Shown: positions 2,425 through 17,571 of the stretch, piece by piece
Position numbering within the stretch: the stretch's first letter is position 1
Layout of the letters: each line of letters starts with the position of its first letter
IMG/VR virus record: IMGVR_UViG_3300028275_000006
Location: 148,543-212,542 of that record
DNA: 64,000 nt
Reading direction: 5' to 3' (one strand)
Made by a program: the position numbers and the translations under genes
The notes under the pieces: model-generated
Seen by the model: the letters and a program-made list of their open reading frames with translations, nothing else
What the model was told of the DNA's origin: nothing
The model's database searches: none

Positions 2425-3129
2425 ATGTCAACAATTATAGCCACCTTGGTGATGGTTCAAATCACCATAGCCTGTGTTACCCTTTATCTTCATAGAGGAC
2501 AAACACACAGAGCAGTAACATTCCATCCAGCAGTAAATCACTTCATGCGTTTTTGGCTTTGGCTTACAACAGGTATGGTTACCAAGCAATGGGTAGCAAT
2601 ACATCGCAAACATCATCAAGCCAGCGATACAGATTTAGATCCGCACAGTCCACAAGTTTACGGTATTAAAACTGTGCTATTCAAAGGCTGGAGTTTATAT
2701 CACTCTGCCAGTAAAGATACCGCAATGGTTGAAAAGTTAGGAGTAGGTACTCCTGATGATTGGCTAGAGCGTAATGTTTACACCCTACACAGCCGCCTTG
2801 GAATTCTCTTAATGTTAGTCATAGACTTATTGTTCTTTGGTCCTTGGGGTATTCTTGTGTGGGGCATTCAAATGATATGGATTCCATTCTGGGCCGCTGG
2901 TGTTATTAATGGACTGGCACATTGGTGGGGATATCGTAATACTGACACCAAAGACACTAGCCGTAACTTATGGCCTTGGGCTATTTGGATCGGTGGTGAG
3001 GAACTACATAACAATCATCATGCCGATGGGGCCAATGCTAGTTTCCGTCAACGTTGGTTTGAATTAGATATCGGTTGGATCTATATTAAGGTACTACGCT
3101 TCTTTAACCTTGCACAGGTTAGGAATTAA
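2425..3129 (+). CDS. membrane fatty acid desaturase (delta-9/DesA-like)
   Basis: Three His boxes HRGQTH, HRKHH, HNNHH and TM segments. Confidence 0.9.
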   Translation: MSTIIATLVMVQITIACVTLYLHRGQTHRAVTFHPAVNHFMRFWLWLTTGMVTKQWVAIHRKHHQASDTDLDPHSPQVYGIKTVLFKGWSLYHSASKDTAMVEKLGVGTPDDWLERNVYTLHSRLGILLMLVIDLLFFGPWGILVWGIQMIWIPFWAAGVINGLAHWWGYRNTDTKDTSRNLWPWAIWIGGEELHNNHHADGANASFRQRWFELDIGWIYIKVLRFFNLAQVRN

Positions 3130-3868
3130 CAGCAATAAACTCTGCTTCAGGAATACGTGTCTTAGTATTCTTACTTCCTAGTACTACTACAATTCTGCGT
3201 CCTATTTCTGTATCCAACATCATTACTATGCAACCTCCACTGGCTCTTATGTAGCCAGTTTTGCTGACAATAAATTCATGACGCTTGCCAATAATTGGAT
3301 TAGTATTATTAAAGATAAACCACTTTTTCTTTATCTTAATTTTAACCTGCGGTGTGCGTGATGCTTCAATAATCTCTGCGTAGTTCTTTGCCGCTAGAAC
3401 TAGTTTAATTAAATCAGTGGCTGTGCTTACATTAAACACACTAAGCCCTGTAGGTTCGACATACTTTGTGTCGTGCATACCTAACAGATGTGCTTTAGTA
3501 TTCATTGCTCTAACACAGGCATCCTTACCATTAGGATAGTATTGACACAGTAGATCAGCCGCTTTGTTGTCGCTGTGTACTAATGCTAGTTGTATTGTTT
3601 CGGCTCGGGTATACTTACCGATTTGTTCATCTAAGTTTTGATTAGCATCTAACACAACCATTGCCGTCATTAGTTTAGTAATGCTGGCAATACTACGCTG
3701 TTGATCTATGTTTTCGCTTTGAATAATTCTGCCGGATTCATCGGCCACGAGCCAGCTCTGAGCGGTGATAGACAGAGGTTTGGCAGTGGCGGCGCTTGTT
3801 TGCCCATGATGTAAAAAGGCAAAAAATACCAATATAGATATAACTCTACACATCTGTCTATTGTACAC
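3119..3868 (-). CDS. peptidase S11 D-Ala-D-Ala endo/carboxypeptidase (PBP7-like)
   Basis: Signal peptide; SxxK (SITK), SxN (SDN) and KTG motifs. Confidence 0.9.
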   Translation of the reverse strand: MYNRQMCRVISILVFFAFLHHGQTSAATAKPLSITAQSWLVADESGRIIQSENIDQQRSIASITKLMTAMVVLDANQNLDEQIGKYTRAETIQLALVHSDNKAADLLCQYYPNGKDACVRAMNTKAHLLGMHDTKYVEPTGLSVFNVSTATDLIKLVLAAKNYAEIIEASRTPQVKIKIKKKWFIFNNTNPIIGKRHEFIVSKTGYIRASGGCIVMMLDTEIGRRIVVVLGSKNTKTRIPEAEFIAVNS

Positions 3869-3889: not shown

Positions 3890-5941
3890 TTATTTTTCAT
3901 GTGCTATGAATTCACCATTCCAATTATCTGGAAGGTTCTGTTCTTTCATAAACTCGCAACGTTCAATCCAGATTTTGTAGTACTTGTCCATTTGTCCACC
4001 AAAGTTGCCTTTTAGTTTTTTACACATAGCGGCTGCTTCGTCGAACTTCTTTTGTTTATACAAGGCATGCATCAACTCGTGCTGTACTTTATCTTTACTG
4101 TAATCTTCACCTTTGGTTCTTAATGCTGTATAGATTAAGTCTGCTACAGTTTTGCCTTTAGGTTGTAAGTTATCTAGCATTAGATAGAAGAAGTCATCTT
4201 TAGTACGGTTGTAAGTTTCAGCACCGATGATACATAACACGCCATAGGCCTTACAACGTGCTTCTAAACGAGCGGCGGTTGAAACCATGTCACCTAAGAT
4301 GTCGTAACTATGTCTGTCAGTTGATCCCATCTCACCAATAAAGCCAATACCTGAGTTACAACCCCAACCCATTGCGGCTGGTGGTAAGCCTTGTGCTTCC
4401 ATTAGTTTAGTATACTCATCAACAGCATCTAACATCTGTAAACCAACAGCAACAATAGTACGGGCATGATTAGGATCTTCAATCGGAGCACCGTGTATGT
4501 GCATACTTGCGTCACCTACATACTTTATGACCATACCCTTGTTGTCCATGATAGGCTGACTAATAGCATCCATGTAACCGTTCATATACTTGCCTAATCC
4601 AGCAACATCATCACCGTAGTGTTCTCCAATGGGTGTAAAGCCACGCAAGTCACTGAACATAACGGATACGTCTTTACGCACACCACGCTTGATTAGGTCT
4701 GGATCTTTTTGTAGCATTTCTACTACTTCCTTACTACAGTATCCAGCGAACTGTTTCTTAATTGCCTGTTTCTGTAAAAACTCGCTTATAAACTTAACGC
4801 CATAACAATGAAGAGCAACGATAATAAGGCCAAACGCGATCGCAGTCGCGTCTCCCAAGACGAGCCAATTATTGAAAGCGTAGATAGTACCAGGAACGAT
4901 GGCACCAACAATAACCACAGTAGCACCAATGCCAACATAAGTCCACCTCGATAAGAAAATTAATAATATGCCAAGTGATACTAATGCTAAAATTTCAACC
5001 CCGTCGGCATAGTCGGGACGTTGAATAACAATGCCGTTAACCATTGTACCAATTACTGCGGCCTGCACTTCGTGAGGAAATACAGCACCTTTGCTTGTCG
5101 GTAACGGATTACTAATACCAGCGGCAGTAGGACCTACAATAACGACGGCGCCACCTAAATCTTTTGGAAGTTTAACAGCACTAACGCTATGAGCTTCTTG
5201 GCTCCAATCGATCCAAATTCTTCCTAAACTATCTGTAGCAATAGGACCAAACTTTGGAATACGCATTTTCTCAACGCCGCCTTCAAAAAGTTTTACTTGG
5301 AAGGTAGAGTCTCCTGCGGCGACTCTAAGTGTCTCTAAACTCAATGCTGGATATAATTTGCCGTCTACAGTAACAATTAACGGCATGCGGCGATTAACAC
5401 CATCTACTTCTGGAAGTGTTCCTGTAATGCCAACACCTGCGGCATTTTGTTCTAGTTGAGGAACGTTGGCGATTAGTCCCGGGTATTGAATAATTTGATC
5501 TAGATGTTCTGGACCTAGTACAGCCGATCCTGGAACACGTGGTGTATTCTTTGTTTTCTGTGCTGGCGCACTTCCTAGTACTACAGGGAACTCTTTTAGA
5601 GTTTGTCCTAGCGCACCATCTCCACCAGTACGATCTGTCTCTGGCATAAGAACATTAAGTACAACAAGTCCTGCATTTCTTTGGTATAGTTCCTTCACAA
5701 GTTTAGCATATTCTGCTCTTGGTAAGGGCCACTGACCATATTTGTCTAACGTGGCTTCGTCGATATTTACAGTAACTATGTTGTTAACTGTAACTTCTTT
5801 ACTTGTAATTAATGTGTCAAAATAACGTAGTCTTACGCTTTCAACAAATGTAGGATCTGCAACTCTGACACCAACAACTAGTGCTAGAGTTAGTAAAGCA
5901 GTCCATGGACTTACTAGTATTTTTTTGAATTGTATTTTCAT
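3890..5941 (-). CDS. CHASE2-domain class III adenylate cyclase
   Basis: N-terminal TM, periplasmic CHASE2 (GQWPLPR, DGVNRRMPL), 3 TM, then FSDLRGFT, IKYVGD, YDILGD, AARLE. Confidence 0.92.
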   Translation of the reverse strand: MKIQFKKILVSPWTALLTLALVVGVRVADPTFVESVRLRYFDTLITSKEVTVNNIVTVNIDEATLDKYGQWPLPRAEYAKLVKELYQRNAGLVVLNVLMPETDRTGGDGALGQTLKEFPVVLGSAPAQKTKNTPRVPGSAVLGPEHLDQIIQYPGLIANVPQLEQNAAGVGITGTLPEVDGVNRRMPLIVTVDGKLYPALSLETLRVAAGDSTFQVKLFEGGVEKMRIPKFGPIATDSLGRIWIDWSQEAHSVSAVKLPKDLGGAVVIVGPTAAGISNPLPTSKGAVFPHEVQAAVIGTMVNGIVIQRPDYADGVEILALVSLGILLIFLSRWTYVGIGATVVIVGAIVPGTIYAFNNWLVLGDATAIAFGLIIVALHCYGVKFISEFLQKQAIKKQFAGYCSKEVVEMLQKDPDLIKRGVRKDVSVMFSDLRGFTPIGEHYGDDVAGLGKYMNGYMDAISQPIMDNKGMVIKYVGDASMHIHGAPIEDPNHARTIVAVGLQMLDAVDEYTKLMEAQGLPPAAMGWGCNSGIGFIGEMGSTDRHSYDILGDMVSTAARLEARCKAYGVLCIIGAETYNRTKDDFFYLMLDNLQPKGKTVADLIYTALRTKGEDYSKDKVQHELMHALYKQKKFDEAAAMCKKLKGNFGGQMDKYYKIWIERCEFMKEQNLPDNWNGEFIAHEK

Positions 5942-6474
5942 TTTTTAAATCCTGGCTTTGGTAAGTGGTTGCGGCCGTAACTAATTCTACTGCCTATAAT
6001 TTGTTCTAATGCTGTATGTAAGGCTTGTCCTGATAAATGTTTACGCAACCATTTTTCTGCTAAGTTGTTAATAATCTTTTCATTAGCGTGTGCAAAGCCG
6101 CCTTTACTTTTAGCGTGTACATAAGCGTGATATGCTTCGTGGGCCGCAACAGCAACGTCTCGTGCCGCGGTGCTGTCTAGATTTGGTAAGTTGATACTGC
6201 CAACGCCGTCGCCTGTATCCCTAAACATTGGATCTCCGCTACTCTGGTAGACATAATACATTCCAGGACCTAATTCGTCATCATCGTCAGTTACTCTATC
6301 TCTACCTAGAATATTTCTAACTACATCATATGCTGTCCAAAGCGTGGCTGCAGGTTCTCTGCTTAATTTTGTAGTTGGAAGCATTATTTTATCTTCAGGA
6401 TCGAAGTCACCATATCTTGCTTTTAAATCGGCGTCACTTGCTTCTGCTTCTTTTATAAATTCTTTTGCTCTCAT
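5938..6474 (-). CDS. MRAKEF-family protein with HExxH zinc-metalloprotease-like motif; true start 6474
   Basis: ATG at 6474 gives MRAKEFIKEA; HEAYH with downstream NEKIIN. Confidence 0.7.
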   Translation of the reverse strand: MRAKEFIKEAEASDADLKARYGDFDPEDKIMLPTTKLSREPAATLWTAYDVVRNILGRDRVTDDDDELGPGMYYVYQSSGDPMFRDTGDGVGSINLPNLDSTAARDVAVAAHEAYHAYVHAKSKGGFAHANEKIINNLAEKWLRKHLSGQALHTALEQIIGSRISYGRNHLPKPGFKK

Positions 6475-6614
6475 GATCTTGGTGCCGCGCCGTTTCGAGT
6501 AGCAGGATCCCATGAGTGGCAACCCTTGGGTCGTCCGTCTTTGTCGCAAAATGCTATTCCGGCGCAGCCTGCTAAGGTTGTAATAATTGCTAATATTAAG
6601 ATGTTTTTCAGCAT
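6471..6614 (-). CDS. 47-aa lipoprotein (MLKNILILAIITTLAG-C...) missed by the ORF track
   Basis: Lipobox LAGC; TAAATA 4 nt upstream; ATGA overlap with next gene. Confidence 0.75.
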   Translation of the reverse strand: MLKNILILAIITTLAGCAGIAFCDKDGRPKGCHSWDPATRNGAAPRS

Positions 6615-6632
6615 CCAATATTTAGTTAGATT

Positions 6633-9026
6633 TTATTGGCGAACAACTGTGCTACAACCCGCTGGATTTGTACAACTTTGAATGATGCTAAATGATTTGC
6701 CGCCTGTTTGTTGCAGGTCAACACTGGCTGGGCCACCTGCGTTAGTTACATCAATAACTGCTCTGTTAGCAGTATTTCCTGTTTGTGTCACTAGTGCTGA
6801 GTTGTTATTTCCTGTTAGTGTAATATCAGCGAAATGGCCAGCACCGCCAGACTGTGTAGTGTTTACAGTATTAATATCGCCTGTAACTTTACTGAACAAT
6901 ATGTGATTACCGGTTTGTGTATGATTTACAGTATTACCATTTCCTTGTATTTTAGTTTCAGCATAATTTGAACCACTAGCATTTGACTGATTAGTAGTTA
7001 TGTTATTGCCCCACCCAGGCACTTCTTGCTTTAAGTAGTTACTGCCAGTTTGAGTATTATTAACAATATTGTTGTTTCCTTCTAAGGTAAATTCGATTTT
7101 GTTCTTAGTACCACTTTGTGTAATAGTTACATTATTGTTAGTACCGTATGTTTGTGTGATGTACAATTCGTTATTGTAGTTTTGTGTACCGTTGTTCCAA
7201 GTATTAATTCTAGTTTGTTTAACATCTATATCTGCTGGAGGAACGTATGAGCCACCGCTACCTATAACTTGATCACCAGGCGCATTTGTTTGTGTAATTG
7301 TTCCACCTTCAACTACTGGTCCTAATAAAACTGTTGTACCCGACACGTCAACTACTGCGCTGTTAGAATAAACAAATCCACTAGTGTCAATTGTATTTGT
7401 TTCAGTAATCCACCCTGTAGTAAATGCAGAGTTAGGTACGTTCATACGGCCTGCACCGTAGTCCCATTGAAAACGTAGTCCATAGCCGCCGGTGTCGTTC
7501 CAGTACCATGCTTCAAAATTATAAGTCTGTCCTGCTACTATGTCTATCCAGCCAGACGCTGTATAGCCACCTATACTCTGAAGTTGGAATGTAGATCTAT
7601 CGTTGATAACTGTTTGTCCGTTTACACTCATAACAAATCCGTCATCGCTGTTGCTATAGAAGTATAATCTATATACAGTACCTGCAGGATAATTTTGTGT
7701 CGTCGGAGCAGTAATCGTTCCGTTGAATCTAACTAAGGTACCAGTGTCCATATTTGGAAAACTGCCGTTAGTCGGAACATAAACTCCGTTACTAGTTGTA
7801 CCAATACTAACAGGCTGTCCACCAGGTGGCATATCAGGTACACGATATGGCCCTAACCAGTTTTTAATACAACCTAACCAACCGCAGTTATAAGTGTAAG
7901 GATCGAATTTGTAGACTTTATAGTTTAATCCCTGCTGTATGTTTTGTGTTGTAGTTGTTGCTGTGCCGTTTGCTTCTATGGTGCTGCCATTAACGCCGGT
8001 TGTAGTAACTGTATTAATTGGTGTTGTAGTTGTTGTCAGAACACCGTTTACAATTTTTGTAGTTACTACGTTAGACGCAACCTTAGTTTGATATACTGCT
8101 TCAGTACCATTTGTACTTGTGCTAGTTCCGTCGCTGTAAGTTGTTGTAGTTACAGGTGTGCGATAAACAGTAGTTGTATTACCATTAACCACAGTTCTAG
8201 TTGTATAAGTTACACTAGTTCCTGTTACTGTAGGAGTCGGAGCAGGAGCCGCACCGGCAGTTGCGCCCGTGCCAGCATTGGTCACTGACATTGTGTTATT
8301 ATATCCACCAGCAGTACCACTAGTAGTACCACCAGTAGCACTAGGGCCGCCACCGTTAGCGTTAGCAACTAAGCCAACTGTACTCGAACCAGGCACTCCA
8401 TCGCTGTTAACGATACAGGCATTTGATCCGCCCCATGCACCTTGACAAGCACCGAACCCTGGATTTGATACCCAACCTTGTGCTGTTATATTATTATAAG
8501 GCCCAAACTCCGGGTTATACAATAAGTTGCCGCCGCCATTAAGTTGGAATGTAGGAGCACGATACCAAGGACCATAATCACCTGCCCAGTAACTTCCATC
8601 AATACCGTACATACTGACTGTGGCATAGGCTACTTGGCTTGCTTGTGCCGCAGTAAGCGTTGCACTGATAGTTACTGTAGTCCAAGGTACCGCAGTATCA
8701 ATACAAGGATTACCACACACAGCATTTGGGTTTGGTAAGTTAGCAGAGTTAGTTGAGTTTACGCTAGTGATTAATCCACCACTGCTGTTATAGAACTGTA
8801 TCTTTACGTTAGCCGTATCACTTTGTCCTGCACGGCCGCCGCCGTTGTGTGCTAGTACACTCATTGTAAATGTACCGCCTTGTTGCATATTACTATCAAA
8901 CACTACTTGTTGACTAATTGTAGTAGTAACATAAGCAGTAGCAATAGCATTATAAGTCACAGCCTGACTATGTGCGCTAATGCACACAGTTAAAAACACA
9001 AGGAACTGTAATAAACGTTTTATCAT
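6633..9026 (-). CDS. secreted 797-aa protein: FBA-like lectin domain, Thr-rich linker, PA14 domain, C-terminal curlin-like repeats
   Basis: Signal peptide; GIDGSYWAGDYGP; SDDG...GQTYNFEAWY; repeated (I/V)xQxGxxN. Confidence 0.75.
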   Translation of the reverse strand: MIKRLLQFLVFLTVCISAHSQAVTYNAIATAYVTTTISQQVVFDSNMQQGGTFTMSVLAHNGGGRAGQSDTANVKIQFYNSSGGLITSVNSTNSANLPNPNAVCGNPCIDTAVPWTTVTISATLTAAQASQVAYATVSMYGIDGSYWAGDYGPWYRAPTFQLNGGGNLLYNPEFGPYNNITAQGWVSNPGFGACQGAWGGSNACIVNSDGVPGSSTVGLVANANGGGPSATGGTTSGTAGGYNNTMSVTNAGTGATAGAAPAPTPTVTGTSVTYTTRTVVNGNTTTVYRTPVTTTTYSDGTSTSTNGTEAVYQTKVASNVVTTKIVNGVLTTTTTPINTVTTTGVNGSTIEANGTATTTTQNIQQGLNYKVYKFDPYTYNCGWLGCIKNWLGPYRVPDMPPGGQPVSIGTTSNGVYVPTNGSFPNMDTGTLVRFNGTITAPTTQNYPAGTVYRLYFYSNSDDGFVMSVNGQTVINDRSTFQLQSIGGYTASGWIDIVAGQTYNFEAWYWNDTGGYGLRFQWDYGAGRMNVPNSAFTTGWITETNTIDTSGFVYSNSAVVDVSGTTVLLGPVVEGGTITQTNAPGDQVIGSGGSYVPPADIDVKQTRINTWNNGTQNYNNELYITQTYGTNNNVTITQSGTKNKIEFTLEGNNNIVNNTQTGSNYLKQEVPGWGNNITTNQSNASGSNYAETKIQGNGNTVNHTQTGNHILFSKVTGDINTVNTTQSGGAGHFADITLTGNNNSALVTQTGNTANRAVIDVTNAGGPASVDLQQTGGKSFSIIQSCTNPAGCSTVVRQ

Positions 9027-10129
9027 TTTTGTATCAAGGTAATAATAGTATTACCTCCCTGATTTATTCTGTTCTTAAATTCTAAATTGCCCTGTGTTTG
9101 TAATATTGTTGAGTTTTGTGTGAGTGGTGTTTTAACACATTGTATGTCAGCACCGTTGTCGCGACAGAGTTCAACACTCATATCATCTTTGTAGGCTATA
9201 ATGCCACTGGACTTTTTATAGTCTGGTAGCACAGGATCTACAGGATCTAAAAACTTTTGATCCAGTATGTTTCCCACAATGTCGAATAAGTTAGCAAGGA
9301 AATCATTAGACAAAAAGTTTTTGGCTAACTTATCTTCATAAATCATATTGGCCTGCATATCTAAATAATTCTCCAAACCTTTCTCTTTTAAAAAGTCAAA
9401 GTCTAAAGCATTAAATGTTCTCTGTTGTTCTTGTTGTGCTTGTTTGACTTCGCGCGGAGGACTGACAATTAACATATTGCCAATGGCCATTTCACTTAGA
9501 TTTAATACTTTAGGCGGTGTAGGAGGTTGTGTTCTACTTTGAACTTTAGTTACTTGGAAGGGTTGATTTAGTATTACAGTACCTACATCATTGCTAACTT
9601 CAATACTGCCAGTCTTACAGTTAGTTTCAATATCTCTAACTGAGCGTGTTGGTCTATCATTAGGACAACTAGGTAAAAGAATAATTGTACTTTCGCCTAG
9701 CTCGTCTACAGTGGCAGTAAAGTCAGTACCGCGTACAGCAACAGTAGCACTAGGAGTAGAAAGGGCCACATTCTGAGGCGAATTCTTAGCAATCTGTCCA
9801 GACGCATAACGAACTGTGCCAAGAGCAATCTTAGCACCTAGTTTACCCGCCTTACTTTTTGGATCATAAACGAAATCATCAATTACAAGTTTAGAATTTT
9901 CATTGACTTGGACTTTAGTATCGTCCTCAAATGTTATCCCCACCTTGCCCTGCTGGGTCTTGATCGCATCGTTCATTTCCACTCCAGTCCCTTTCGACGC
10001 CGTTAGTGTCGAATTCTGTCTCTGGATAGTCGGGGGTGTATTGATTTGTTCCGTTACTTTGCCTATCGCGGCGTAGGCCAACGATGTACTCAGCAACGGA
10101 ACGCATAATACTACCATCCATAATTTCAT
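9023..10129 (-). CDS. periplasmic FecR-domain protein
   Basis: Signal peptide; GVEMNDAIKT, ITFEDDTKVQVNENSKLVID, TPSATVAVRGTDF. Confidence 0.85.
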   Translation of the reverse strand: MKLWMVVLCVPLLSTSLAYAAIGKVTEQINTPPTIQRQNSTLTASKGTGVEMNDAIKTQQGKVGITFEDDTKVQVNENSKLVIDDFVYDPKSKAGKLGAKIALGTVRYASGQIAKNSPQNVALSTPSATVAVRGTDFTATVDELGESTIILLPSCPNDRPTRSVRDIETNCKTGSIEVSNDVGTVILNQPFQVTKVQSRTQPPTPPKVLNLSEMAIGNMLIVSPPREVKQAQQEQQRTFNALDFDFLKEKGLENYLDMQANMIYEDKLAKNFLSNDFLANLFDIVGNILDQKFLDPVDPVLPDYKKSSGIIAYKDDMSVELCRDNGADIQCVKTPLTQNSTILQTQGNLEFKNRINQGGNTIITLIQK

Positions 10130-10138
10130 GGAACCCTC

Positions 10139-11113
10139 TTAGTTTTTCTGTAAAATAGTGTAAGTGTTGCCACTTCCTGATATAGCAAGATTAGTTAGAT
10201 TGCTAACTGATCCTTGTTGTGTAATACCAATAGTATTAGTACTACCTGTTACAGATAACGTTGTGCTGTGTCCAGTAGCAGATCCACCTGTTTGTGCAAG
10301 TGTAATGCCATTGCTACCGCCTGTTACAGTAATACTAGCATAGTGATCGTACGCACCAGTTTGTGTTACGTCTGTAGTATTACCAGAACCTGTGATGTTG
10401 ATAATTGCTTGAGCACCAGTTACACCGTATGCACTCTGTGTTACAGATGTAGTGTTAGTTGCACCAACAGTTGTTAGACTAACTTGACCTTTGTTTCCGG
10501 TCATGTTAAGTGTAGTTGCGTTGCCGCCGCCACCTGTTTGACTAACAGTTGCTACAGTTTCATCAGCGTTGATTGTACCTGTAAATGTGTTGTTAGCACC
10601 ACCACTAGTTCCAACAGTTAATTGGTTACTTGTACCAGTCATGTTAAGTGTTGTAGTTGCACTACCGCCACTTTGAACAAAACTAACAACGTTACCACTG
10701 GCTGTGCCTGTACCATTATTGTTAATATTAATGTAACCTGTGTTTCCACCACCACTTACTTGGTAATTTAAATTCACACCAATATTAGCATAACCTTGTA
10801 CAGTACCACCTTGTGTTGAGTTAACACCTAACGCCAATACGTTAGTTGCTCCTGTTTGCTCAATGTTGATAGTCTGTGCGGCACCAGTTAGTTTAGCAGG
10901 ATCAGTTGTTCCACCTGCTGTGCCATTTAATAATATACCCTTTACTTTGTTTCCTGCTCCGTCTTGAGTCATAGTAATAGTACTATTATCGCCGGACTGA
11001 TCAATGTAAATGCTATTGTCAGCCGCATAACCCAATGTTGTCATTGCAGACAACACCAGAATTGTGAGTAATTTTCTCGACAACCCACCAGCGCCTGTGA
11101 TTCTCTTATGCAT
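10139..11113 (-). CDS. curlin-repeat (CsgA/CsgB-like) beta-solenoid secreted protein
   Basis: Signal peptide; many Q-x-G-x-x-N repeats; Gly/Thr/Asn-rich. Confidence 0.8.
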   Translation of the reverse strand: MHKRITGAGGLSRKLLTILVLSAMTTLGYAADNSIYIDQSGDNSTITMTQDGAGNKVKGILLNGTAGGTTDPAKLTGAAQTINIEQTGATNVLALGVNSTQGGTVQGYANIGVNLNYQVSGGGNTGYININNNGTGTASGNVVSFVQSGGSATTTLNMTGTSNQLTVGTSGGANNTFTGTINADETVATVSQTGGGGNATTLNMTGNKGQVSLTTVGATNTTSVTQSAYGVTGAQAIINITGSGNTTDVTQTGAYDHYASITVTGGSNGITLAQTGGSATGHSTTLSVTGSTNTIGITQQGSVSNLTNLAISGSGNTYTILQKN

Positions 11114-11196
11114 CGTTTTTACAGAATTAGGTTATCTTCCCTAACTCGCTCCTTGGTCTAAGACCATTAAAAAATTTAAAGTGCTACCTCTCTTTC

Positions 11197-12366
11197 TTAT
11201 TTTTGTTTGTTAACTACTTCTTTTTTAACAAACCCTTTACGCTTCTCTACGTCCTGCACTTGTACCCAATCACCTTCGCTCCCGGTTATGAATACTCGTG
11301 TATTTGGCTTAAACTGCCAAGTCCTTTGACTCTTTTCGTTTGGCTCCTTGTATATAAACTGAGCATCCTTTAGAATTGCTTCTGTAGGTAACTTCTCTAG
11401 TTCTTTTGCGGCGGTACTGGGTACGGCCTTGGTTTCGGTTTCGGATTTGGTTTGTGATTGAACCACGACATCTTTCTTCTCCTCTACTTTAACTTCTTCT
11501 TTAATCTCAGAGCTAATTACCGGCTGGGCCGCTGGTGCTGGTACAGGTGCCTTGGCCGCTGGTGCGGATTCTGGTTTAAACTCCCATACACCTTTACGTT
11601 GTCCTTCCTTAATTAACTCTACGACTGCCATTTCAATAGTTGCCTTTGTAGCGTAAGTGCCAGGTTCATTGATAGTTAAACCTGCTTCTGCTTCAAATGC
11701 CTTAGTGCCTGCGTCAAAGAATTTTAATGCAGATACGCTGTCTGCTGAACTTAAGATAGTCTTTTGTACTGTCACTGTGGCTAATACCTTACCAGTGTTT
11801 ACGCTAACTGCTCGTAAACTTACTGTTACTGTATCAGTGCTCCACTGTGTATTTTTGCCTATGCCAAATATACGTTGACCTACACCACCGCTGGTAGTGC
11901 TTTGATCGTAGCCTACTATTCCGCCTTCTACAATAATTCCAGCGAATTGCATTGGTAGCAATGGTTTAGCATCTTTACCTTCATATGCTTCGCGCATTTG
12001 CCTAATAATTAAACGTTCTTTAGTTAGGTTATCAATGCCCACACGTTCTACAACGTCGAACCATTGACCGCGTCCTACATTTTGTAATGCCTGTATTAAG
12101 AATGTTTCTGCACCCTGTGTCACTGCTGTTGATAAACTGGCAATGTTTGCCTGCGGTCTACGTTGACCTGTTTTATCAGTAAAACTATAAACGGCCACGC
12201 TTAGTGGTCTTCCAGCGATTGGACTAGGTATTGTATCAAATTCTTTCTTAACATTAGTCATTTGCCCTGTAACTTCAGGACTCTTGTCTAGTACTCCAGT
12301 TGTCTGCATAACAGCACAACCTGAAAGCATAGTTAAAACTGCTAGGGATAGTATTGTCTTTTTCAT
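11197..12366 (-). CDS. csgG: CsgG curli secretion channel lipoprotein with a C-terminal SH3b-like extension
   Basis: Lipobox LSGC; AVYSFTDKTGQ, STAVTQGA, WFDVVERVGIDNLTKERLIIR, EAEAG; Pro/Ala linker then GDWVQV..GFV. Confidence 0.9.
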   Translation of the reverse strand: MKKTILSLAVLTMLSGCAVMQTTGVLDKSPEVTGQMTNVKKEFDTIPSPIAGRPLSVAVYSFTDKTGQRRPQANIASLSTAVTQGAETFLIQALQNVGRGQWFDVVERVGIDNLTKERLIIRQMREAYEGKDAKPLLPMQFAGIIVEGGIVGYDQSTTSGGVGQRIFGIGKNTQWSTDTVTVSLRAVSVNTGKVLATVTVQKTILSSADSVSALKFFDAGTKAFEAEAGLTINEPGTYATKATIEMAVVELIKEGQRKGVWEFKPESAPAAKAPVPAPAAQPVISSEIKEEVKVEEKKDVVVQSQTKSETETKAVPSTAAKELEKLPTEAILKDAQFIYKEPNEKSQRTWQFKPNTRVFITGSEGDWVQVQDVEKRKGFVKKEVVNKQK

Positions 12367-12369
12367 GTC

Positions 12370-12909
12370 TTAGTTCCCCGGCATTTGGAATGAACTTAAT
12401 GGAACATACACACAACTCATTCCAGTGTCTGTGCATGATGCTGTACTTGGGTTAGTGGCTGTAGGATCTGCAATCTTTAACATAATGCAGTATCCGTAGG
12501 CTGTTGAACAGTTAGCATCGTTAGCACTACTAACTCTGCCCCAACTAATATAGTTGCCCTGGAAGTCAATGTTGCCAGAACAGTTTGTGTTGCTACTTGC
12601 TGTACAGTTGTTATTGGCAAACATAGCGGTTGCTACGTTCTGACTAATCTGTGCATAGATACGTGATTCTAAGTTACTAACAAACTTAGCAAGGTTGGTG
12701 TTTTTCTTATCTGCGGCTGCTTTGTCAATTTCAGCCTGTAGTTTATCTGCACGTTCTTTCTGACGTGTGCGCTCTTGATTCTCAATGGTTAATACATGAC
12801 TGCTGTAACCTACGCCGTTAAAGGCAGGACTCTTAAAGGTGTAATCACCTAAAGGTGCTGCCGATACAATCATAGGCAATAATGCTATAAGTGATAATAG
12901 TTTTTTCAT
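12370..12909 (-). CDS. csgF: CsgF-like curli assembly protein
   Basis: Signal peptide; YTFKSPAFNG, FVSNLESRIYAQIS; directly upstream of csgG. Confidence 0.8.
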   Translation of the reverse strand: MKKLLSLIALLPMIVSAAPLGDYTFKSPAFNGVGYSSHVLTIENQERTRQKERADKLQAEIDKAAADKKNTNLAKFVSNLESRIYAQISQNVATAMFANNNCTASSNTNCSGNIDFQGNYISWGRVSSANDANCSTAYGYCIMLKIADPTATNPSTASCTDTGMSCVYVPLSSFQMPGN

Positions 12910-12976
12910 TCGGTTCGCTCCCGGCTATCTCACTATTATTTAATCTAGAGCAAGAAAGATTCTATTACCACATAAT

Positions 12977-13002
12977 AAAAAAGGGCTCCGAAGAGCCCTT
13001 TT
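12977..13002 (-). terminator. intrinsic terminator (UUCG loop), possibly bidirectional
   Basis: AAAAGGGCTC-TTCG-GAGCCCTTTTTT after the BI-1 gene. Confidence 0.85.
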
Positions 13003-13023: not shown

Positions 13024-13713
13024 TTATTTTCTATCACCAAACAACTGTAGTAAATTAATGAACAGATTAATAAAATCCATATATAGTGTTAATGCACCTG
13101 TTACTTCGGTTGCAGGATCAGAGTCGATTGAAACCATTTCTCGTATTTGCTGTGTATCGTAAGCAGTTAATCCTAGAAAGATAATAATTGCTAATGCACT
13201 GATAACCATGGCCATTACACTACTACCAATAAAGATGTTAACAATACTGGCAATAACAATAGCAATCAATCCAATGAACATAAACTGTCCAAGACTTTCC
13301 AAACTACGTTTTGTAAAGTATCCATAGAAGCTCATTGTACCAAACAAGATCGCCGCACCCATAAACGCACTAACAATACTGCCCATGGTAAAGATAGCAA
13401 AAATTGTAGCAAAGCTCAAACCCATTAATGCCGCAAAACCATGTAAGCATAGTTGGGCGACTTGTTTACTAGGGTTATTAGATAGTACCATGCTAACACC
13501 AAAGATAGCAACCAGTGGTGCAAAAATTACAATCCACTTCATTACACCTGTAAAGAAGAATTGTAACAATTCTGGGCTAGTACCTACAAAGTAACTAACA
13601 ATCATAGACACAAGAACTGCTAGGCTCATGTGTCCATAGACACGACCCATTGCTTCATTGATCTGTGCGGCTGAACGGTAAATTCCAGTACCTGTGTAAC
13701 TTGCACCAAACAT
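13024..13713 (-). CDS. Bax inhibitor-1/YccA family membrane protein
   Basis: 7 TM; LTAYDTQQIR, GALTLYMDFINLF. Confidence 0.9.
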   Translation of the reverse strand: MFGASYTGTGIYRSAAQINEAMGRVYGHMSLAVLVSMIVSYFVGTSPELLQFFFTGVMKWIVIFAPLVAIFGVSMVLSNNPSKQVAQLCLHGFAALMGLSFATIFAIFTMGSIVSAFMGAAILFGTMSFYGYFTKRSLESLGQFMFIGLIAIVIASIVNIFIGSSVMAMVISALAIIIFLGLTAYDTQQIREMVSIDSDPATEVTGALTLYMDFINLFINLLQLFGDRK

Positions 13714-13735
13714 AAATTTCTCCTGAAGTTAAAAA

Positions 13736-13811
13736 TGGTGCCCCTTGTCCGACTCGAACAGACCACCTACTGATTACAAATCAGTTGCTCTACCAGATGA
13801 GCTAAAGGGGC
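13736..13811 (-). tRNA. trnT: tRNA-Thr(UGU), CCA encoded
   Basis: GCCCCTT acceptor/AAGGGGC-ACCA; D arm AGCTCATCTGGTAGAGC; anticodon stem ACTGA-TTTGTAA-TCAGT; T loop TTCGAGT. Confidence 0.95.
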
Positions 13812-13820
13812 AATGTTTTT

Positions 13821-13850
13821 ATTATATATGAACTTCGTAAGATTTGTCAA
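13821..13850 (-). promoter_or_regulatory. sigma70-type promoter for the tRNA/BI-1 unit
   Basis: TTGACA-18-TATAAT on the minus strand, ending 10 nt before the tRNA. Confidence 0.6.
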
Positions 13851-15415: not shown

Positions 15416-16320
15416 TCACAGTTCCAACGTTTACGTGCTTTGCAGATTGCCTTGTCTGGTGTCTTAGTGCAATCAATATTGTGCATTTTCTTTTGGCCAT
15501 CACTTCTAGCACAAAAACTTGATCTACGCTTACTTGCCTTAGATCCTTTCTTTAATTTGCTAGGAGGTGTAGTGACTGCTGTTTTTAATTTACTACCAGG
15601 ATGTTCTCTACGATATGCTTTAACGGCTTTACTGCTCATGCCATCGGTTTTGTCTTTCTTATTAACCTTCTGCCAATCTTCTGACATACCTTCTGGGCCA
15701 ATTTGAACTAACCATTCTAATTCATCGTCTGCATCTCTAACACTGAAGAATTTAACATTAGGAATCTTCTTAGCCGCAAACCATTTGTTAGCCACTTTAA
15801 CCATTAGGGCACGATGTTGACGATCATTAACATCCGGTTCATATCCGCCTGTTAAGTTTGCCCACAATGCACTTGGATTGCCATGGCGATCGTAACCCAA
15901 CAATTCACGCCATTGTTGTTGTAAGCGATCTGGCACATACTGATCCAATTCAGTGTCGCTCATCCACTCTCGGCCAATATCGACACCTTCCGCCATGGCG
16001 GCTTCAGTTAAGTCTTCTGGGGCAAAACCAATATAACTCTTACCATGCTCATCGCCAGACTGCACAACAAATGCGCCGCCTTCTTCTGATTCGATTTCGC
16101 CAATTTCCCAACCCATACGATTTAATAGTTTTTCAACTTTTTGTTGTATGTCGTCATCGCCATTGTACCAAATACGAGCGTACTTGAGTAATGTTTCTTC
16201 TTCGTCGCCACTATTATCCGGCGCAAATTCTTTTACATTTTGCTTTTTCTTTTTAGCAATAGCGATAGCGGCTTGTTGTGCGGCATTGGTTGCTTCTGTG
16301 ATGAATTCTTTTGCTCTCAT
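15412..16320 (-). CDS. MRAKEF-family modular protein with basic Cys-containing C-terminal domain seen in T4-like phages
   Basis: MRAKEFITEA; C-terminal GSKLKTAVT...RRSSFCAR...CKARKRWNC. Confidence 0.7.
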   Translation of the reverse strand: MRAKEFITEATNAAQQAAIAIAKKKKQNVKEFAPDNSGDEEETLLKYARIWYNGDDDIQQKVEKLLNRMGWEIGEIESEEGGAFVVQSGDEHGKSYIGFAPEDLTEAAMAEGVDIGREWMSDTELDQYVPDRLQQQWRELLGYDRHGNPSALWANLTGGYEPDVNDRQHRALMVKVANKWFAAKKIPNVKFFSVRDADDELEWLVQIGPEGMSEDWQKVNKKDKTDGMSSKAVKAYRREHPGSKLKTAVTTPPSKLKKGSKASKRRSSFCARSDGQKKMHNIDCTKTPDKAICKARKRWNCE

Positions 16321-17024: not shown

Positions 17025-17571
17025 AGTGTGGAACTATATCCATCATTTGATCAAAGAATTTTGCCGCAAAATCAAAACATACTCTTGCTTCATCTGCTAG
17101 ACTATCATCTAGTTTTGCACGAATTGCTTCTTTGATCTTTTCAGGTTCGTCTCCAAACTGATAGTATTTGCCACTGCCTGGAACTCTTTTAGCAATCATT
17201 TGACCGCCTGATAAATCTCCCATGTGACGTACATAAATGTGTGCCATCAACTTTTTAGGATCATCTTTGATGCTGAGAATATATTTGATATATTCATCCA
17301 CTACCGGACACATTTTTGGTTCTTCAGGATTGTCTGAGCCCCATAGTTCTATGAAGTCAGATAAAATTGCAGGTGCTCTGCGTATCTCTGGTAGACCGGA
17401 AAGTAATCCATGTGGCATAGCACAGACTTCTAAAATCTCATACATTGGATGTTGATTTTTTAGATATGTTGCGTATAGTTTAGGATTTACATTTCCTGAA
17501 AATAAGACTTTAACAAAAGGCCTTGTTTCTGCTCTGCGATGTTGCTCGTGTGTAAGTTCTTTTAGACTCAT
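17017..17571 (-). CDS. hemO: heme oxygenase
   Basis: LKELTHEQHRRAE proximal His; AHIYVRHMGDLSGGQMI distal helix. Confidence 0.92.
   Translation of the reverse strand: MSLKELTHEQHRRAETRPFVKVLFSGNVNPKLYATYLKNQHPMYEILEVCAMPHGLLSGLPEIRRAPAILSDFIELWGSDNPEEPKMCPVVDEYIKYILSIKDDPKKLMAHIYVRHMGDLSGGQMIAKRVPGSGKYYQFGDEPEKIKEAIRAKLDDSLADEARVCFDFAAKFFDQMMDIVPHYE

What the first reader, a model, noticed from the sequence alone, without database searches (positions are those of the whole stretch)
3890..12909. Phage-encoded curli-secretion plus FecR plus CHASE2 adenylate cyclase module
Seen: co-oriented run csgF, csgG, curlin-repeat protein, FecR protein, lectin-curlin protein, small lipoprotein, HExxH protein, CHASE2 cyclase, downstream of a late promoter. 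Known: CsgG/CsgF export curlin subunits; CHASE2 cyclases with FecR-domain partners act in envelope signalling (e.g. Sinorhizobium CyaD1/CyaD2/CyaK with NsrA); csgF/csgG pairs are, as I recall, reported in some marine T4-like phages, usually without curlin substrates. Inferred: a complete trans-envelope circuit in which phage-built surface fibres or lectins sense contact and signal through FecR to cAMP, or aggregate/shield infected cells.
Basis: partly seen in the sequence, partly recalled or inferred. Interest (0 to 1): 0.85.

Follow-up and report, generated by a model that had tools for sequence, protein, structure and literature searches.

The report
Phage curli-fibre and cAMP-sensor module
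A large phage carries a complete kit for growing sticky amyloid (curli) fibres on its host's surface, joined to an envelope sensor that makes cAMP; the same kit was described in marine pelagiphages in 2022, so this is a new, lectin-carrying member of a known but functionally unexplained kind.

Summary
Window 12909-3890 (minus strand) is a tight co-oriented run: csgF, csgG (with a C-terminal SH3 domain), a curlin-repeat protein, a secreted FecR-domain protein, a CBM-like/PA14/curlin fusion, a 47-aa lipoprotein, an HExxH protein and a CHASE2 class III adenylate cyclase.

The window is 100% identical to a 212-kb IMG/VR phage contig. In viral contigs found with CsgG alone, CsgF (79/79), FecR (64/64) and the cyclase (46/48) co-occur in fixed order.

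The module is not new. Wittmers et al. 2022 (PMC9599517) described CsgF-CsgG-CsgA/B-FecR-CsgA/B-adenylate cyclase in pelagiphages. HTVC008M and Melnitz carry it, and it is annotated there.

This analysis adds five points:
- The cyclase sensor domain is CHASE2. FecR-CHASE2 gene pairs recur in bacteria (Rhizobiaceae; the Burkholderia FecR/CHASE2-kinase operon).
- Both curlin genes are true curlins (profile versus PDB 8C50, E = 3e-21).
- The second curlin carries shuffled lectin domains; the PA14 fold is confirmed.
- The C-terminal domain of the FecR protein resembles a pore-plug "retention module".
- A Caulobacteraceae chromosome holds the whole module, nested within the phage clade.

The HExxH gene is a strain-specific insertion. 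The sensing circuit remains an inference.

The parts
12979..13002 (-). Intrinsic terminator (10-bp stem, T run) that ends the upstream tRNA-Thr/Bax1-I unit. It sets the 5' boundary of the module's transcription unit.
   Evidence: sequence read
12933..12944 (-). Promoter-like motif ATTAAATAATAG, resembling a T4-type late promoter, 35 nt upstream of the csgF start. An invariant CCGGGAGCGAACC (Shine-Dalgarno region) follows it.
   Evidence: Conserved in five relatives and in Melnitz upstream of gp97. All five occurrences in the window precede an ORF start. No canonical TATAAATA is present here.
12370..12909 (-). csgF, 179 aa. It has a signal peptide and the conserved N-terminal motif FKSP(A/S)FNGxGYSSH. 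This corresponds to the CsgG-binding constriction peptide of E. coli CsgF (from memory). The C-terminal half is Cys-rich (6 Cys).
   Evidence: Pfam CsgF E = 1.8e-7; phrog_35372 E = 1.5e-40; motif and Cys counts; signal peptide
11197..12366 (-). csgG, 389 aa, an outer-membrane lipoprotein pore (lipobox LSGC). Residues about 270-333 form a Pro/Ala/Lys/Glu-rich linker. Residues 334-385 (nt 11212-11367) form a bacterial SH3 domain, presumably periplasmic.
   Evidence: Pfam CsgG E = 1e-46 and SH3_4 E = 1e-7. E. coli CsgG E = 6e-42; the constriction residues Y51/N55/F56 align to Q/S/L. Lipobox. CsgG length varies from 253 to 463 aa among relatives.
10139..11113 (-). cur1, 324 aa. Signal peptide followed by imperfect curlin repeats, with no Cys. 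Proposed major fibre subunit (CsgA-like).
   Evidence: PDB 8C50 curlin E = 1e-6; Pfam Curlin_rpt borderline; always between csgG and fecR; 0 Cys in 35/40 homologues
9023..10129 (-). FecR-domain protein, 368 aa, with a signal peptide and no transmembrane or anti-sigma domain. Residues 23-196 form a FecR/PupR-type beta domain. Residues 213-292 form a low-confidence helical linker. Residues 305-367 form a small beta domain resembling the MpIBP/LapA retention (pore-plug) module.
   Evidence: Pfam FecR E = 3e-9; phrog_37870 E = 3e-121; AF2 model with pLDDT 73. Foldseek: 6ovk and 4m0n at E = 2-4e-4; 5ix9 at TM 0.73, rmsd 1.2 A, 27% identity, E = 0.028. The C-terminal domain profile finds only 206 representatives, nearly always at the C terminus.
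6633..9026 (-). cur2, 797 aa. Order of parts: signal peptide; CBM4_9-like domain (about 37-162, a lead only); Thr-rich linker; PA14 lectin domain (about 365-540); curlin repeats (about 619-796); C-terminal Cys-x5-Cys motif. Proposed minor, nucleator or tip subunit that displays lectins.
   Evidence: Pfam Curlin_rpt 21.5 bits. The minimal Cur2 profile matches 8C50 at E = 3e-21. Atlas PA14 score 0.93 and CBM score 0.91. AF2 plus Foldseek match MpIBP PA14 (6x8a) at E = 4e-7, TM 0.65. N-terminal domains are shuffled among relatives. Two Cys lie in the last 20 aa in 41/44 homologues.
6471..6614 (-). Small lipoprotein, 47 aa (lipobox LAGC). In relatives it overlaps the cyclase start by 4 nt. Semi-conserved accessory.
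   Evidence: homologues in L008, L009 and L013 at 62-94% identity, directly before the cyclase
5938..6474 (-). HExxH protein, 178 aa, with no signal peptide. It is a strain-specific insertion between the lipoprotein and the cyclase and probably does not belong to the module. It starts with MRAKEFI, like three other genes in the window.
   Evidence: Found only in the 100%-identical contigs L003-L006; no Pfam or PHROG family; shared 20-nt start
3890..5941 (-). CHASE2 class III adenylate cyclase, 683 aa. Topology: TM1 (about 7-34); periplasmic CHASE2 (18-325); three TM segments (about 310-387); cyclase domain (423-581); about 100-aa helical tail.
   Evidence: Pfam; phrog_35576 E = 2.5e-185; PDB cyclases up to E = 2.6e-20; hydropathy. 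Catalytic residues: both metal Asp, Lys and Arg are invariant; Asp547 sits at the adenine-specifying site; the transition-state Asn is replaced by Ser554.
3119..3868 (-). Neighbour: secreted S11 D-Ala-D-Ala carboxypeptidase with its own sigma70-like promoter (3888-3860). It follows the cyclase in many relatives. It acts on the envelope but is not shown to belong to the module.
   Evidence: Pfam Peptidase_S11 E = 1.6e-40; synteny; promoter scan

Best explanation
This is a phage-borne, self-contained type VIII (curli) secretion and fibre module that is genetically fused to a FecR/CHASE2 cAMP-signalling pair. It is transcribed as one roughly 9-kb unit from a late-type promoter-like motif.

Proposed mechanism:
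1. The Sec system exports CsgF, Cur1, the FecR protein and Cur2. CsgG, a lipoprotein, forms the outer-membrane pore and CsgF inserts its conserved N-terminal peptide into it. The components are shown by homology; assembly is inferred.
2. Cur1 (Cys-free curlin repeats) is secreted as the major amyloid subunit. Cur2 (curlin repeats plus a C-terminal Cys-Cys motif) is the minor, nucleating or tip subunit. In this phage Cur2 displays a CBM-like domain and a PA14 sugar-binding domain. The infected cell would therefore grow lectin-decorated fibres that bind glycans on neighbouring cells or particles, or shield its own surface. The domains are shown; the roles are inferred.
3. The periplasmic FecR protein is the partner of the cyclase's periplasmic CHASE2 domain, as in bacterial FecR-CHASE2 gene pairs. 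Its C-terminal plug-like domain docks at the CsgG vestibule and replaces the missing CsgE. Secretion load, fibre state or an outside cue would then be converted into cAMP synthesis. This step is inferred.
4. cAMP acts on host CRP-type regulators or on an unknown phage effector. This step is unknown.
For: - Domain and homology calls for every gene.
- N-terminal hydrophobic export signals on all five periplasmic or secreted proteins, lipoboxes on CsgG and the small lipoprotein, and the CHASE2 domain bracketed by transmembrane segments.
- Tight spacing with three 4-nt overlaps.
- Near-perfect co-occurrence in fixed order, both in 45 FecR-seeded viral loci and in 80 CsgG-seeded viral loci: CsgF 79/79, FecR 64/64, cyclase 46/48.
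- The same six genes, with both curlins ahead of fecR, sit in a Caulobacteraceae chromosomal contig.
- A FecR-domain gene lies directly upstream of a CHASE2 cyclase in at least 11 bacterial loci that have no CsgG. The Burkholderia operon pairs LysM-FecR with a CHASE2 kinase (PMC5192318). NsrA signals to the CHASE2 cyclases CyaK/CyaD (PMC7529298, PMC13001267).
- The cyclase catalytic core is conserved in all 54 sequences compared.
- The FecR model has a PupR/FecR signalling fold and a C-terminal domain matching the 5ix9 retention module.
- The Cur2 PA14 fold is confirmed, and lectin domains are shuffled onto a constant curlin core among relatives.
- Wittmers et al. 2022 reported transcripts of the pelagiphage versions in metatranscriptomes (PMC9599517).
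Against: - No fibres have been seen. Buchholz et al. 2022 saw no clumping of Melnitz-infected cells by cytometry or TEM (PMC9004378).
- The CsgG constriction residues differ from E. coli (Y/N/F to Q/S/L), and no CsgE, CsgC or CsgH is present.
- The FecR-CHASE2 and FecR-CsgG contacts rest only on synteny and on one small-domain fold match. That match has E = 0.028 and no sequence-level support.
- The catalytic Asn is replaced by Ser in this clade, so activity or specificity might be altered.
- No cAMP receptor was identified in the ORFs scanned. The scan covered 30 ORFs of about 140 aa or more between 333 and 57618, not the remaining ORFs or the rest of the 212-kb genome.
- 'Late' timing rests on a motif, not on data.
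Confidence: 0.5

Rival explanations
1. Pore only. CsgG/CsgF is repurposed as a gated channel and no fibres are made. It would act as a pinholin- or secretin-like lysis timer (Buchholz 2022) or as an import channel for nutrients or cofactors (Zaragoza-Solas 2020; Wittmers 2022).
For: The constriction residues are changed relative to E. coli. CsgE is absent. No clumping was seen in Melnitz infections (PMC9004378).
Against: Two curlin-family genes with signal peptides are conserved in essentially every locus. Their profile matches a solved curlin at E = 3e-21. CsgF, which a bare pore does not need, is present in 79/79 loci. Lectin domains fused to curlin repeats make sense only if the protein is displayed.
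Confidence: 0.15
2. The purpose is superinfection exclusion or defence. The fibres shield the infected cell from other phages, and the cyclase is a defence-type nucleotide signal.
For: Wittmers 2022 proposed this. The cyclase gives generic hits to Pycsar PycC models (E = 1.4e-13). The module sits among envelope-modifying genes such as the S11 carboxypeptidase and Bax1-I.
Against: The PycC hit is no better than the general class III cyclase match, and no Pycsar effector or other PADLOC family is present. Lys and Asp at the specificity sites predict ATP as substrate. Lectin domains suggest binding outward rather than shielding. This rival concerns purpose and is compatible with the fibre mechanism.
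Confidence: 0.2
3. FecR is an iron (ferric-citrate-type) regulator, and the T8SS channel serves iron or siderophore uptake, as suggested in PMC9599517.
For: The Pfam family name. The N-terminal domain has the fold of the PupR/FecR periplasmic signalling domain.
Against: The protein has a cleavable-type signal peptide and no transmembrane helix or cytoplasmic anti-sigma domain. No ECF sigma factor or TonB-dependent transducer was noted nearby among the ORFs scanned. Its conserved neighbour is a CHASE2 sensor, as in bacterial FecR-CHASE2 pairs unrelated to iron.
Confidence: 0.05
4. The cyclase/FecR pair and the curli genes are two independent auxiliary functions that merely travel together in a hypervariable island.
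For: The slot between fecR/cur2 and the cyclase accepts unrelated insertions (up to about 5 kb; the HExxH gene here). In a few loci the cyclase is on the other strand, and in 2 of 48 it is missing.
Against: Order and co-occurrence are kept across about 35-100% identity in large-genome and other viral contigs, in podoviruses according to PMC9599517, and in a bacterial chromosome. fecR sits between the two curlin genes and overlaps cur2 by 4 nt.
Confidence: 0.1
5. The curlin/lectin proteins are virion parts, such as fibres or decoration.
For: PA14/GLEYA domains occur in viral proteins (Atlas rows). The window also encodes tail-spike-like proteins.
Against: N-terminal hydrophobic export signals on Cur1 and Cur2. 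They are embedded between the secretion-pore genes. There is no structural-gene context.
Confidence: 0.03

Closest known systems
Pelagiphage T8SS module (Wittmers et al. 2022, PMC9599517; HTVC008M gp014-019; Melnitz gp99-104)
   Same: Same genes in the same order: CsgF, CsgG, curlin, FecR, second curlin, adenylate cyclase. The window's cyclase is 45.7% identical to that of Melnitz and 35.5% to that of HTVC008M.
   Different: - The window comes from a different, larger phage: a 212-kb contig with about 40% GC, encoding DnaK, Hsp20, heme oxygenase and a bilin reductase.
- CsgG carries a C-terminal SH3 domain.
- The second curlin is 797 aa and carries CBM-like and PA14 domains, against 338-441 aa in the isolates.
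- There are extra lipoprotein and HExxH genes.
- There is no small upstream 'HK'-type ORF.
- The paper does not mention CHASE2 or lectin domains, and it reads FecR as an iron regulator.
Enterobacterial curli system (csgBAC-csgDEFG)
   Same: A CsgG lipoprotein pore (E = 6e-42 to E. coli CsgG), CsgF with a conserved N-terminal pore-binding motif, and two curlin-repeat subunits.
   Different: - No CsgE, CsgC or CsgD.
- Constriction residues are Q/S/L instead of Y/N/F.
- The curlins are longer and one is fused to lectin domains.
- The system is coupled to FecR and a CHASE2 cyclase, and is carried by a phage.
Sinorhizobium meliloti NsrA to CyaK/CyaD1/CyaD2 (CHASE2 adenylate cyclases) to cAMP to Clr
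   Same: An envelope protein upstream of an inner-membrane CHASE2 class III cyclase relays an outside, proteinaceous signal into cAMP (PMC7529298, PMC13001267). In Rhizobium and Agrobacterium loci, a protein of 840-886 aa with an N-terminal FecR domain sits directly upstream of the CHASE2 cyclase.
   Different: The phage FecR protein is short (368 aa) and lacks the C-terminal outer-membrane part. The outer-membrane and extracellular element here is the CsgG/CsgF/curlin apparatus. I could not verify NsrA's own domain content from the papers held.
Burkholderia 'BiofilmReg' operon (RR, LysM-FecR protein, CHASE2 histidine kinase, DUF4136; PMC5192318)
   Same: A secreted FecR-domain protein is encoded next to a CHASE2 sensor, and the operon is linked to biofilm formation.
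   Different: The output is a histidine kinase and response regulator rather than a cyclase. The FecR protein carries LysM. There is no secretion system.
LapA/MpIBP-type RTX adhesins (retention module 5IX9; PA14 lectin 6X8A)
   Same: The C-terminal domain of the FecR protein matches the retention module that plugs an outer-membrane pore (TM 0.73; its function is described in bioRxiv 10.1101/198937). The Cur2 PA14 domain matches the MpIBP sugar-binding PA14.
   Different: These are fold-level resemblances only, with no sequence-level link. The secretion system is different (T1SS versus T8SS), and the domains sit on separate proteins.

Membership tests
Type VIII (curli) secretion system | CsgG-family outer-membrane lipoprotein pore | tested here: met
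   Pfam CsgG E = 1e-46; E. coli CsgG E = 6e-42 over residues 8-265; lipobox LSGC
Type VIII (curli) secretion system | CsgG constriction loop residues (E. coli Y51, N55, F56) | tested here: not met
   The loop is present but aligns to Q, S, L with a one-residue insertion. The residue numbering is recalled from the E. coli structures.
Type VIII (curli) secretion system | CsgF accessory protein with an N-terminal pore-binding peptide | tested here: met
   Pfam CsgF 31.8 bits against a cutoff of 25.8. The motif FKSP(A/S)FNGxGYSSH is conserved across relatives. There is no direct PDB sequence hit.
Type VIII (curli) secretion system | Secreted curlin-repeat subunits (major subunit plus nucleator) | tested here: met
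   Cur1 versus 8C50 at E = 1e-6. The minimal Cur2 profile versus 8C50 at E = 3e-21 with six repeat matches. Both have N-terminal hydrophobic export signals. Which one nucleates was not tested.
Type VIII (curli) secretion system | Periplasmic gate and chaperones CsgE/CsgC(H) and regulator CsgD | tested here: not met
   No such family appears among the module ORFs. PMC9599517 reports that they are also absent in alphaproteobacterial and pelagiphage modules.
Type VIII (curli) secretion system | Formation of extracellular amyloid fibres | not testable with these tools
   Needs Congo red or ThT staining and electron microscopy of expressing or infected cells
Class III adenylate cyclase | Two metal-binding Asp residues and the transition-state Arg | tested here: met
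   D431, D477 and R558 are invariant in all sequences aligned at these columns, 53-54 of 54. Alignment to Cya2/IlaC.
Class III adenylate cyclase | Adenine-specifying Lys and Asp (or Thr/Ser) | tested here: met
   K473 is invariant. Position 547 is Asp in 27 module sequences and Thr/Ser in the others.
Class III adenylate cyclase | Transition-state Asn (ribose contact) | tested here: not met
   Position 554 is Ser in the window, in Melnitz and in 25 other module sequences. It is Asn in HTVC008M, in the Caulobacteraceae copy and in all bacterial CHASE2 cyclases. The Ser co-varies with Asp547.
CHASE2 sensor proteins | CHASE2 domain between an N-terminal TM and a cluster of three TM segments, with the output domain in the cytoplasm | tested here: met
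   Pfam CHASE2 E = 7e-37, residues 18-325. Hydropathy segments at 7-34 and 310-387.
FecR-type anti-sigma regulators (FecR/PupR) | Periplasmic FecR signalling domain fold | tested here: met
   Pfam FecR E = 3e-9. The model matches 6ovk (PupR) and 4m0n at E = 2-4e-4.
FecR-type anti-sigma regulators (FecR/PupR) | Cytoplasmic anti-sigma domain plus a single transmembrane helix, with a cognate ECF sigma factor and TonB-dependent transducer | tested here: not met
   Only an N-terminal signal-like segment is present and no other TM. No sigma factor or transducer was found in the module. The protein should not be filed as an iron-citrate regulator.
Bacterial FecR-CHASE2 sensor pair | A secreted FecR-domain protein encoded next to, and co-oriented with, a CHASE2 sensor | tested here: met
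   Window gene order. The same adjacency occurs in at least 11 bacterial loci and in the Burkholderia operon.
Bacterial FecR-CHASE2 sensor pair | Physical or functional coupling of the two proteins | not testable with these tools
   No multimer prediction or assay was available
Phage T8SS-FecR-AC module (PMC9599517) | Gene order CsgF, CsgG, curlin, FecR, (curlin), cyclase on a phage genome | tested here: met
PA14 lectin domain | PA14 beta-sandwich fold | tested here: met
   Foldseek to MpIBP PA14 at E = 4e-7, TM 0.65, and to flocculins and Epa adhesins. Atlas score 0.93 with 176 shared features. Pfam itself gave no PA14 hit.
PA14 lectin domain | Ca2+/sugar-binding residues | not tested
   The model's confidence and the alignment were not examined at residue level
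Pycsar defence system | PycC cyclase plus an adjacent cNMP-binding effector | tested here: not met
   Only generic PycC homology (E = 1.4e-13) and no effector

The most novel reading that the evidence does not exclude
The FecR protein replaces CsgE. Its C-terminal plug-like domain sits in, or threads through, the CsgG pore, while its FecR domain touches the CHASE2 domain of the cyclase. The phage would thereby build a trans-envelope sensor that reports fibre engagement or an outside cue as cAMP. One possible cue is proteins released by lysed neighbours, as in NsrA/CyaK, which respond to free ribosomal protein uL2. The phage would use the signal to time lysis or to retune the host. The effect would be a phage-encoded 'neighbourhood sensor', analogous in outcome to T4 lysis inhibition.
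Probability: 0.1. Interest if true: 0.85.

Novelty: new member of a known kind. Interest (0 to 1): 0.4.

Why it matters
Phage-encoded curli modules are very widespread. There are at least 589 IMG/VR contigs with CsgG relatives and at least 7,987 FecR homologues in the protein database. Wittmers et al. found them at all 65 GOV2 ocean stations. They give infected cells a surface structure that the known hosts lack, yet their function is unknown.

This window widens the module's reach to a different, large, AMG-rich phage.

It also sharpens the hypotheses:
- The 'FecR + adenylate cyclase' part is a FecR-CHASE2 envelope-sensor pair of a type found in bacteria. It is not an iron regulator.
- The second curlin is a scaffold on which sugar-binding domains are swapped. 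This points to adhesion with evolving specificity.

Both ideas can be tested directly in E. coli and in the cultured Melnitz/OM43 and HTVC008M/SAR11 systems. If the coupling is real, it would be the first case of a curli secretion system wired to a second-messenger sensor.

Tried and rejected
1. FecR C terminus as a curlin repeat. The ending (…GGNTIITLIQK) looks like the Cur1 ending, but profile-profile comparison gave probability 2%. Rejected.
2. Canonical T4 late promoter. TATAAATA occurs only 3 times in the window, fewer than chance, and not near csgF. I replaced it with the weaker conserved ATTAAATA-type motif.
3. Structured RNA upstream of csgF. Rfam finds only the tRNA, and the leader folds no better than shuffles (z = -0.37).
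4. Pycsar or other defence system. Only a generic cyclase hit.
5. Sequence link between the FecR C-terminal domain and 5ix9. None found. Multi-repeat hits in the 1.84-billion-protein search are cadherin or low-complexity proteins and are uninformative.
6. The 'histidine kinase' upstream of csgF reported in PMC9599517. Small ORFs upstream of csgF in 15/79 relatives match the cyclase's C-terminal about 100 aa in my HMM, but they have no Pfam family. The window has no such ORF.
7. HExxH protein as a module member or paralogue of the 517-aa upstream protein. They share only the first 7 residues (20 nt).
10. The NsrA paper PMC5952392 is not held.

Full report
**What is there.** The region 12909-3890 holds eight co-oriented ORFs on the minus strand. 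They are 3-83 nt apart or overlap by 4 nt (fecR/cur2, lipoprotein/HExxH, HExxH/cyclase).

Pfam assigns:
- CsgF (E = 1.8e-7).
- CsgG (E = 1e-46) with a C-terminal bacterial SH3 domain.
- A curlin-repeat protein (borderline).
- A FecR-domain protein (E = 3e-9).
- A 797-aa protein with curlin repeats at its C terminus.
- A protein with CHASE2 (E = 7e-37) and a class III cyclase domain (E = 8e-14).

Between the 797-aa gene and the cyclase lie a 47-aa lipoprotein (lipobox LAGC) and a 178-aa protein with an HExxH motif.

A strong terminator (13002-12979) closes the upstream tRNA-Thr/Bax1-I unit, which has a perfect sigma70-type promoter. No canonical T4 late promoter precedes csgF. However, an ATTAAATAATAG motif 35 nt upstream of the csgF start is conserved in otherwise unalignable leaders of five relatives and in Melnitz. 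All five NNTAAATANTAN matches in the window lie 15-38 nt upstream of an ORF start. 'Downstream of a late promoter' is plausible but not shown.

**It is a phage.** The window is 100% identical to a 212.5-kb IMG/VR viral contig. It encodes a tail-spike-like protein, endolysins, ribonucleotide reductase and a virion protein related to T4-like cyanophages.

**The individual parts.**
- *CsgG.* It aligns to E. coli CsgG over residues 8-265 (E = 6e-42) and has a lipobox. The three constriction residues align to Q/S/L rather than Y/N/F.
- *CsgF.* It keeps a conserved N-terminal motif, FKSP(A/S)FNGxGYSSH. From memory, this corresponds to the peptide that E. coli CsgF inserts into the CsgG barrel.
- *Cur1.* It matches the solved curlin 8C50 (E = 1e-6).
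- *Cur2.* A gene of this type directly follows fecR in essentially every phage locus. It is 176-806 aa long and almost always ends in a Cys-x(2-5)-Cys motif. The minimal versions are pure curlin, and their profile hits 8C50 at E = 3e-21 with six repeat matches. Statements in two earlier papers that these phages lack csgA/csgB are therefore wrong. The GenBank records already say 'curlin repeat'.
- *Cur2 in the window.* An AF2 model (pLDDT 67) gives a PA14 fold. It matches the sugar-binding PA14 of the Marinomonas adhesin (E = 4e-7, TM 0.65) and yeast flocculins. The Atlas search agrees. The N-terminal CBM4_9-like call is only a lead. Among relatives the N-terminal domains are shuffled on a constant curlin core: CBM+PA14, CBM only, another domain plus PA14, PA14 only, or none.
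- *Export signals.* CsgF, CsgG, Cur1, FecR and Cur2 all have N-terminal hydrophobic export signals. This argues against a virion role.
- *Cyclase.* It has the standard CHASE2 topology. Both metal-binding Asp residues, the adenine-specifying Lys and the Arg are conserved in all 54 sequences compared. The window's clade and Melnitz have Asp547+Ser554, whereas bacterial CHASE2 cyclases, HTVC008M and others have Thr/Ser+Asn. The two positions co-vary.
- *FecR protein.* The AF2 model (pLDDT 73) has three parts. The N-terminal domain has the fold of the FecR/PupR periplasmic signalling domain (E = 2-4e-4). A low-confidence helical linker follows. The confident 60-residue C-terminal beta domain best matches 5IX9 (TM 0.73, rmsd 1.2 A, 27% identity, E = 0.028). 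5IX9 is the retention module proposed to plug the TolC-like pore in MpIBP and LapA-type adhesins. The match has no sequence-level support. In 1.84 billion representatives the domain is found in only 206 proteins, nearly always at the C terminus.
- The FecR protein has no transmembrane or anti-sigma domain, so it is not a FecR-type iron regulator.

**Co-occurrence.**
- FecR-seeded scan: 45 viral loci, all with CsgF-CsgG-Cur1-FecR-[Cur2/variable slot]-cyclase wherever the contig extends far enough.
- CsgG-seeded scan, which is unbiased with respect to FecR and the cyclase: at least 589 viral contigs. In the best 80, CsgF is present in 79/79, FecR in 64/64 (with at least 2.5 kb downstream) and the cyclase in 46/48 (with at least 8 kb downstream).
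- The HExxH gene occurs only in the near-identical contigs. It is an insertion.

**Bacterial context.**
- In the genome collection, the best FecR hits are full modules on contigs binned into unrelated phyla. Most of these have phage-like flanks.
- Two Caulobacteraceae MAG contigs (L057, L058) carry the six module genes: CsgF, CsgG, two curlins, FecR and the CHASE2 cyclase. Here both curlins lie ahead of fecR, unlike in the phages. In L057 the flanks were examined and hold methylmalonyl-CoA mutase, acyl-CoA dehydrogenase and an amidohydrolase; module GC there is lower than flank GC.
- In a cyclase tree, these copies nest inside the phage clade next to L059 (100/100). An AU test rejects a phage-only clade (p = 9e-5; the group was named after the tree had been seen). 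With the bacterial FecR-CHASE2-only cyclases as outgroup, this fits phage-to-bacterium transfer.
- At least 11 loci from Rhizobium, Agrobacterium, Devosia, Methylocapsa and others have a FecR-domain gene directly upstream of a CHASE2 cyclase with no CsgG or CsgF.
- In the Rhizobiaceae the FecR protein is 840-886 aa long. This is consistent with the NsrA/CyaK arrangement, although I could not verify NsrA's domains.
- Burkholderia pairs a LysM-FecR protein with a CHASE2 histidine kinase in a biofilm operon.

**Literature.**
- Zaragoza-Solas 2020 and Buchholz 2022 described phage CsgF/CsgG and proposed uptake, 'sibling capture' or lysis timing. Neither mentions the cyclase, FecR or CHASE2.
- Wittmers et al. 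2022 (PMC9599517) described the full set: (HK)-CsgF-CsgG-CsgA/B-FecR-CsgA/B-adenylate cyclase in podo- and myo-pelagiphages. They reported its global distribution, metatranscriptomic expression and an alphaproteobacterial affinity. They proposed superinfection defence, sibling capture, cofactor or iron import, and recombination.
- That paper does not mention CHASE2 or lectin domains, reads FecR as an iron regulator, and states that FecR and the cyclase are not within bacterial T8SS operons.

**Verdict.** The most likely working model is a curli fibre factory whose second subunit displays exchangeable sugar-binding domains. It is coupled through a periplasmic FecR protein to a CHASE2 adenylate cyclase. 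The fibre half is well supported by homology. The sensing half is supported only by conserved synteny, bacterial analogies and one fold match.

Noticed in passing
window 6455-6474, 15396-15415, 16301-16320, 43352-43371 (all minus strand): Four unrelated genes begin with the same about 20 nt (ATGAGAGCAAAAGAATT(T/C)AT, encoding MRAKEFI), with 0, 0, 1 and 3 mismatches. They are the HExxH protein, a 517-aa protein, a DUF6321 protein and a PG_binding/Hydrolase_2 protein. Chance expectation is 0.03 matches. From memory, this resembles the N-terminal capsid-targeting sequence shared by T4 internal proteins, so these may be packaged and injected proteins.
   Followed up: partly
L134, L136, L138-L142, L146, L152, L165, L167, L168, L171, L173, L192 (just upstream of csgF): A small ORF (99-133 aa) in 15 of 79 relatives is a stand-alone paralogue of the last about 100 residues of the CHASE2 cyclase (E down to 6e-16). 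It has no Pfam family. It is probably what PMC9599517 calls 'HK'. It is absent from the window.
   Followed up: partly
L057:7083-13103 and L058 (Caulobacteraceae MAG contigs): The six module genes (csgF, csgG, two curlins, fecR, CHASE2 cyclase; both curlins ahead of fecR) sit in a bacterial chromosomal context, with lower GC than the flanks in L057. The copies nest inside the phage clade in the cyclase tree. This contradicts the published statement that FecR and the cyclase are not in bacterial T8SS operons.
   Followed up: partly
window 3890-5941 and homologues: The cyclase active site exists in two co-varying states. Asp+Ser (YDILGDMVSTAAR) occurs in the window, Melnitz and 25 other sequences. 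Thr/Ser+Asn (YT/SxLGDxVNLASR) occurs in bacterial CHASE2 cyclases, HTVC008M and other phages. The loss of the canonical Asn is conserved, so it is probably functional.
   Followed up: partly
L006:14189-16200: In a contig otherwise 100% identical to the window, the cyclase is split into two ORFs (110 + 585 aa). This is either a frameshift or stop variant, or an assembly error.
   Followed up: no
L061:5210-14827 (contig binned as Rickettsiales, with phage-like flanks): A variant without CsgG/CsgF: a 1317-aa protein with an N-terminal FecR domain and coiled-coil-like middle, followed about 3.7 kb downstream by a CHASE2 cyclase. That cyclase is sister to the whole module clade.
   Followed up: no
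window 13024-13850 (minus strand): A perfect sigma70-type promoter (TTGACA-18-TATAAT, 13850-13821) drives tRNA-Thr(UGU) (13811-13736) and a Bax1-I/YccA-family membrane protein (13713-13024, E = 1e-53). The unit ends at the terminator just before csgF.
   Followed up: no
window 330-893, 17932-18378, 18445-20310: The phage encodes ClpP, an Hsp20 and a full-length Hsp70/DnaK (621 aa, Pfam E = 2e-257). This is an unusually complete proteostasis set for a phage.
   Followed up: no
window 16344-17571: Adjacent heme oxygenase and ferredoxin-dependent bilin reductase genes, a pigment AMG pair known from cyanophages and other marine phages.
   Followed up: no
window 2425-3868: A secreted S11 D-Ala-D-Ala carboxypeptidase lies directly after the cyclase, and a convergent fatty-acid desaturase follows. 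Both keep this position in many relatives, so the module sits in an envelope-remodelling island.
   Followed up: partly
window 12911-12923 and relatives: An invariant 13-nt CCGGGAGCGAACC immediately precedes the csgF start codon in relatives whose leaders are otherwise unalignable. This is more conservation than a Shine-Dalgarno sequence needs, and no structure was detected.
   Followed up: partly
window 44668-51063: A 2131-aa ORF with no Pfam family lies next to a secreted-type Endonuclease_NS gene (43825-44634) that has the same TAAATA-type upstream motif as csgF.
   Followed up: no
window 33299-34927: A tail-spike-like protein combines an Mtd_N (major tropism determinant N-terminal) domain with a pectate-lyase-like beta-helix.
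   Followed up: no
window 11212-11367 and CsgG homologues: CsgG carries a variable C-terminal extension (total length 253-463 aa among relatives). In the window this is a linker plus an SH3b domain, possibly tethering the pore to peptidoglycan. The cultured pelagiphage versions lack it.
   Followed up: partly
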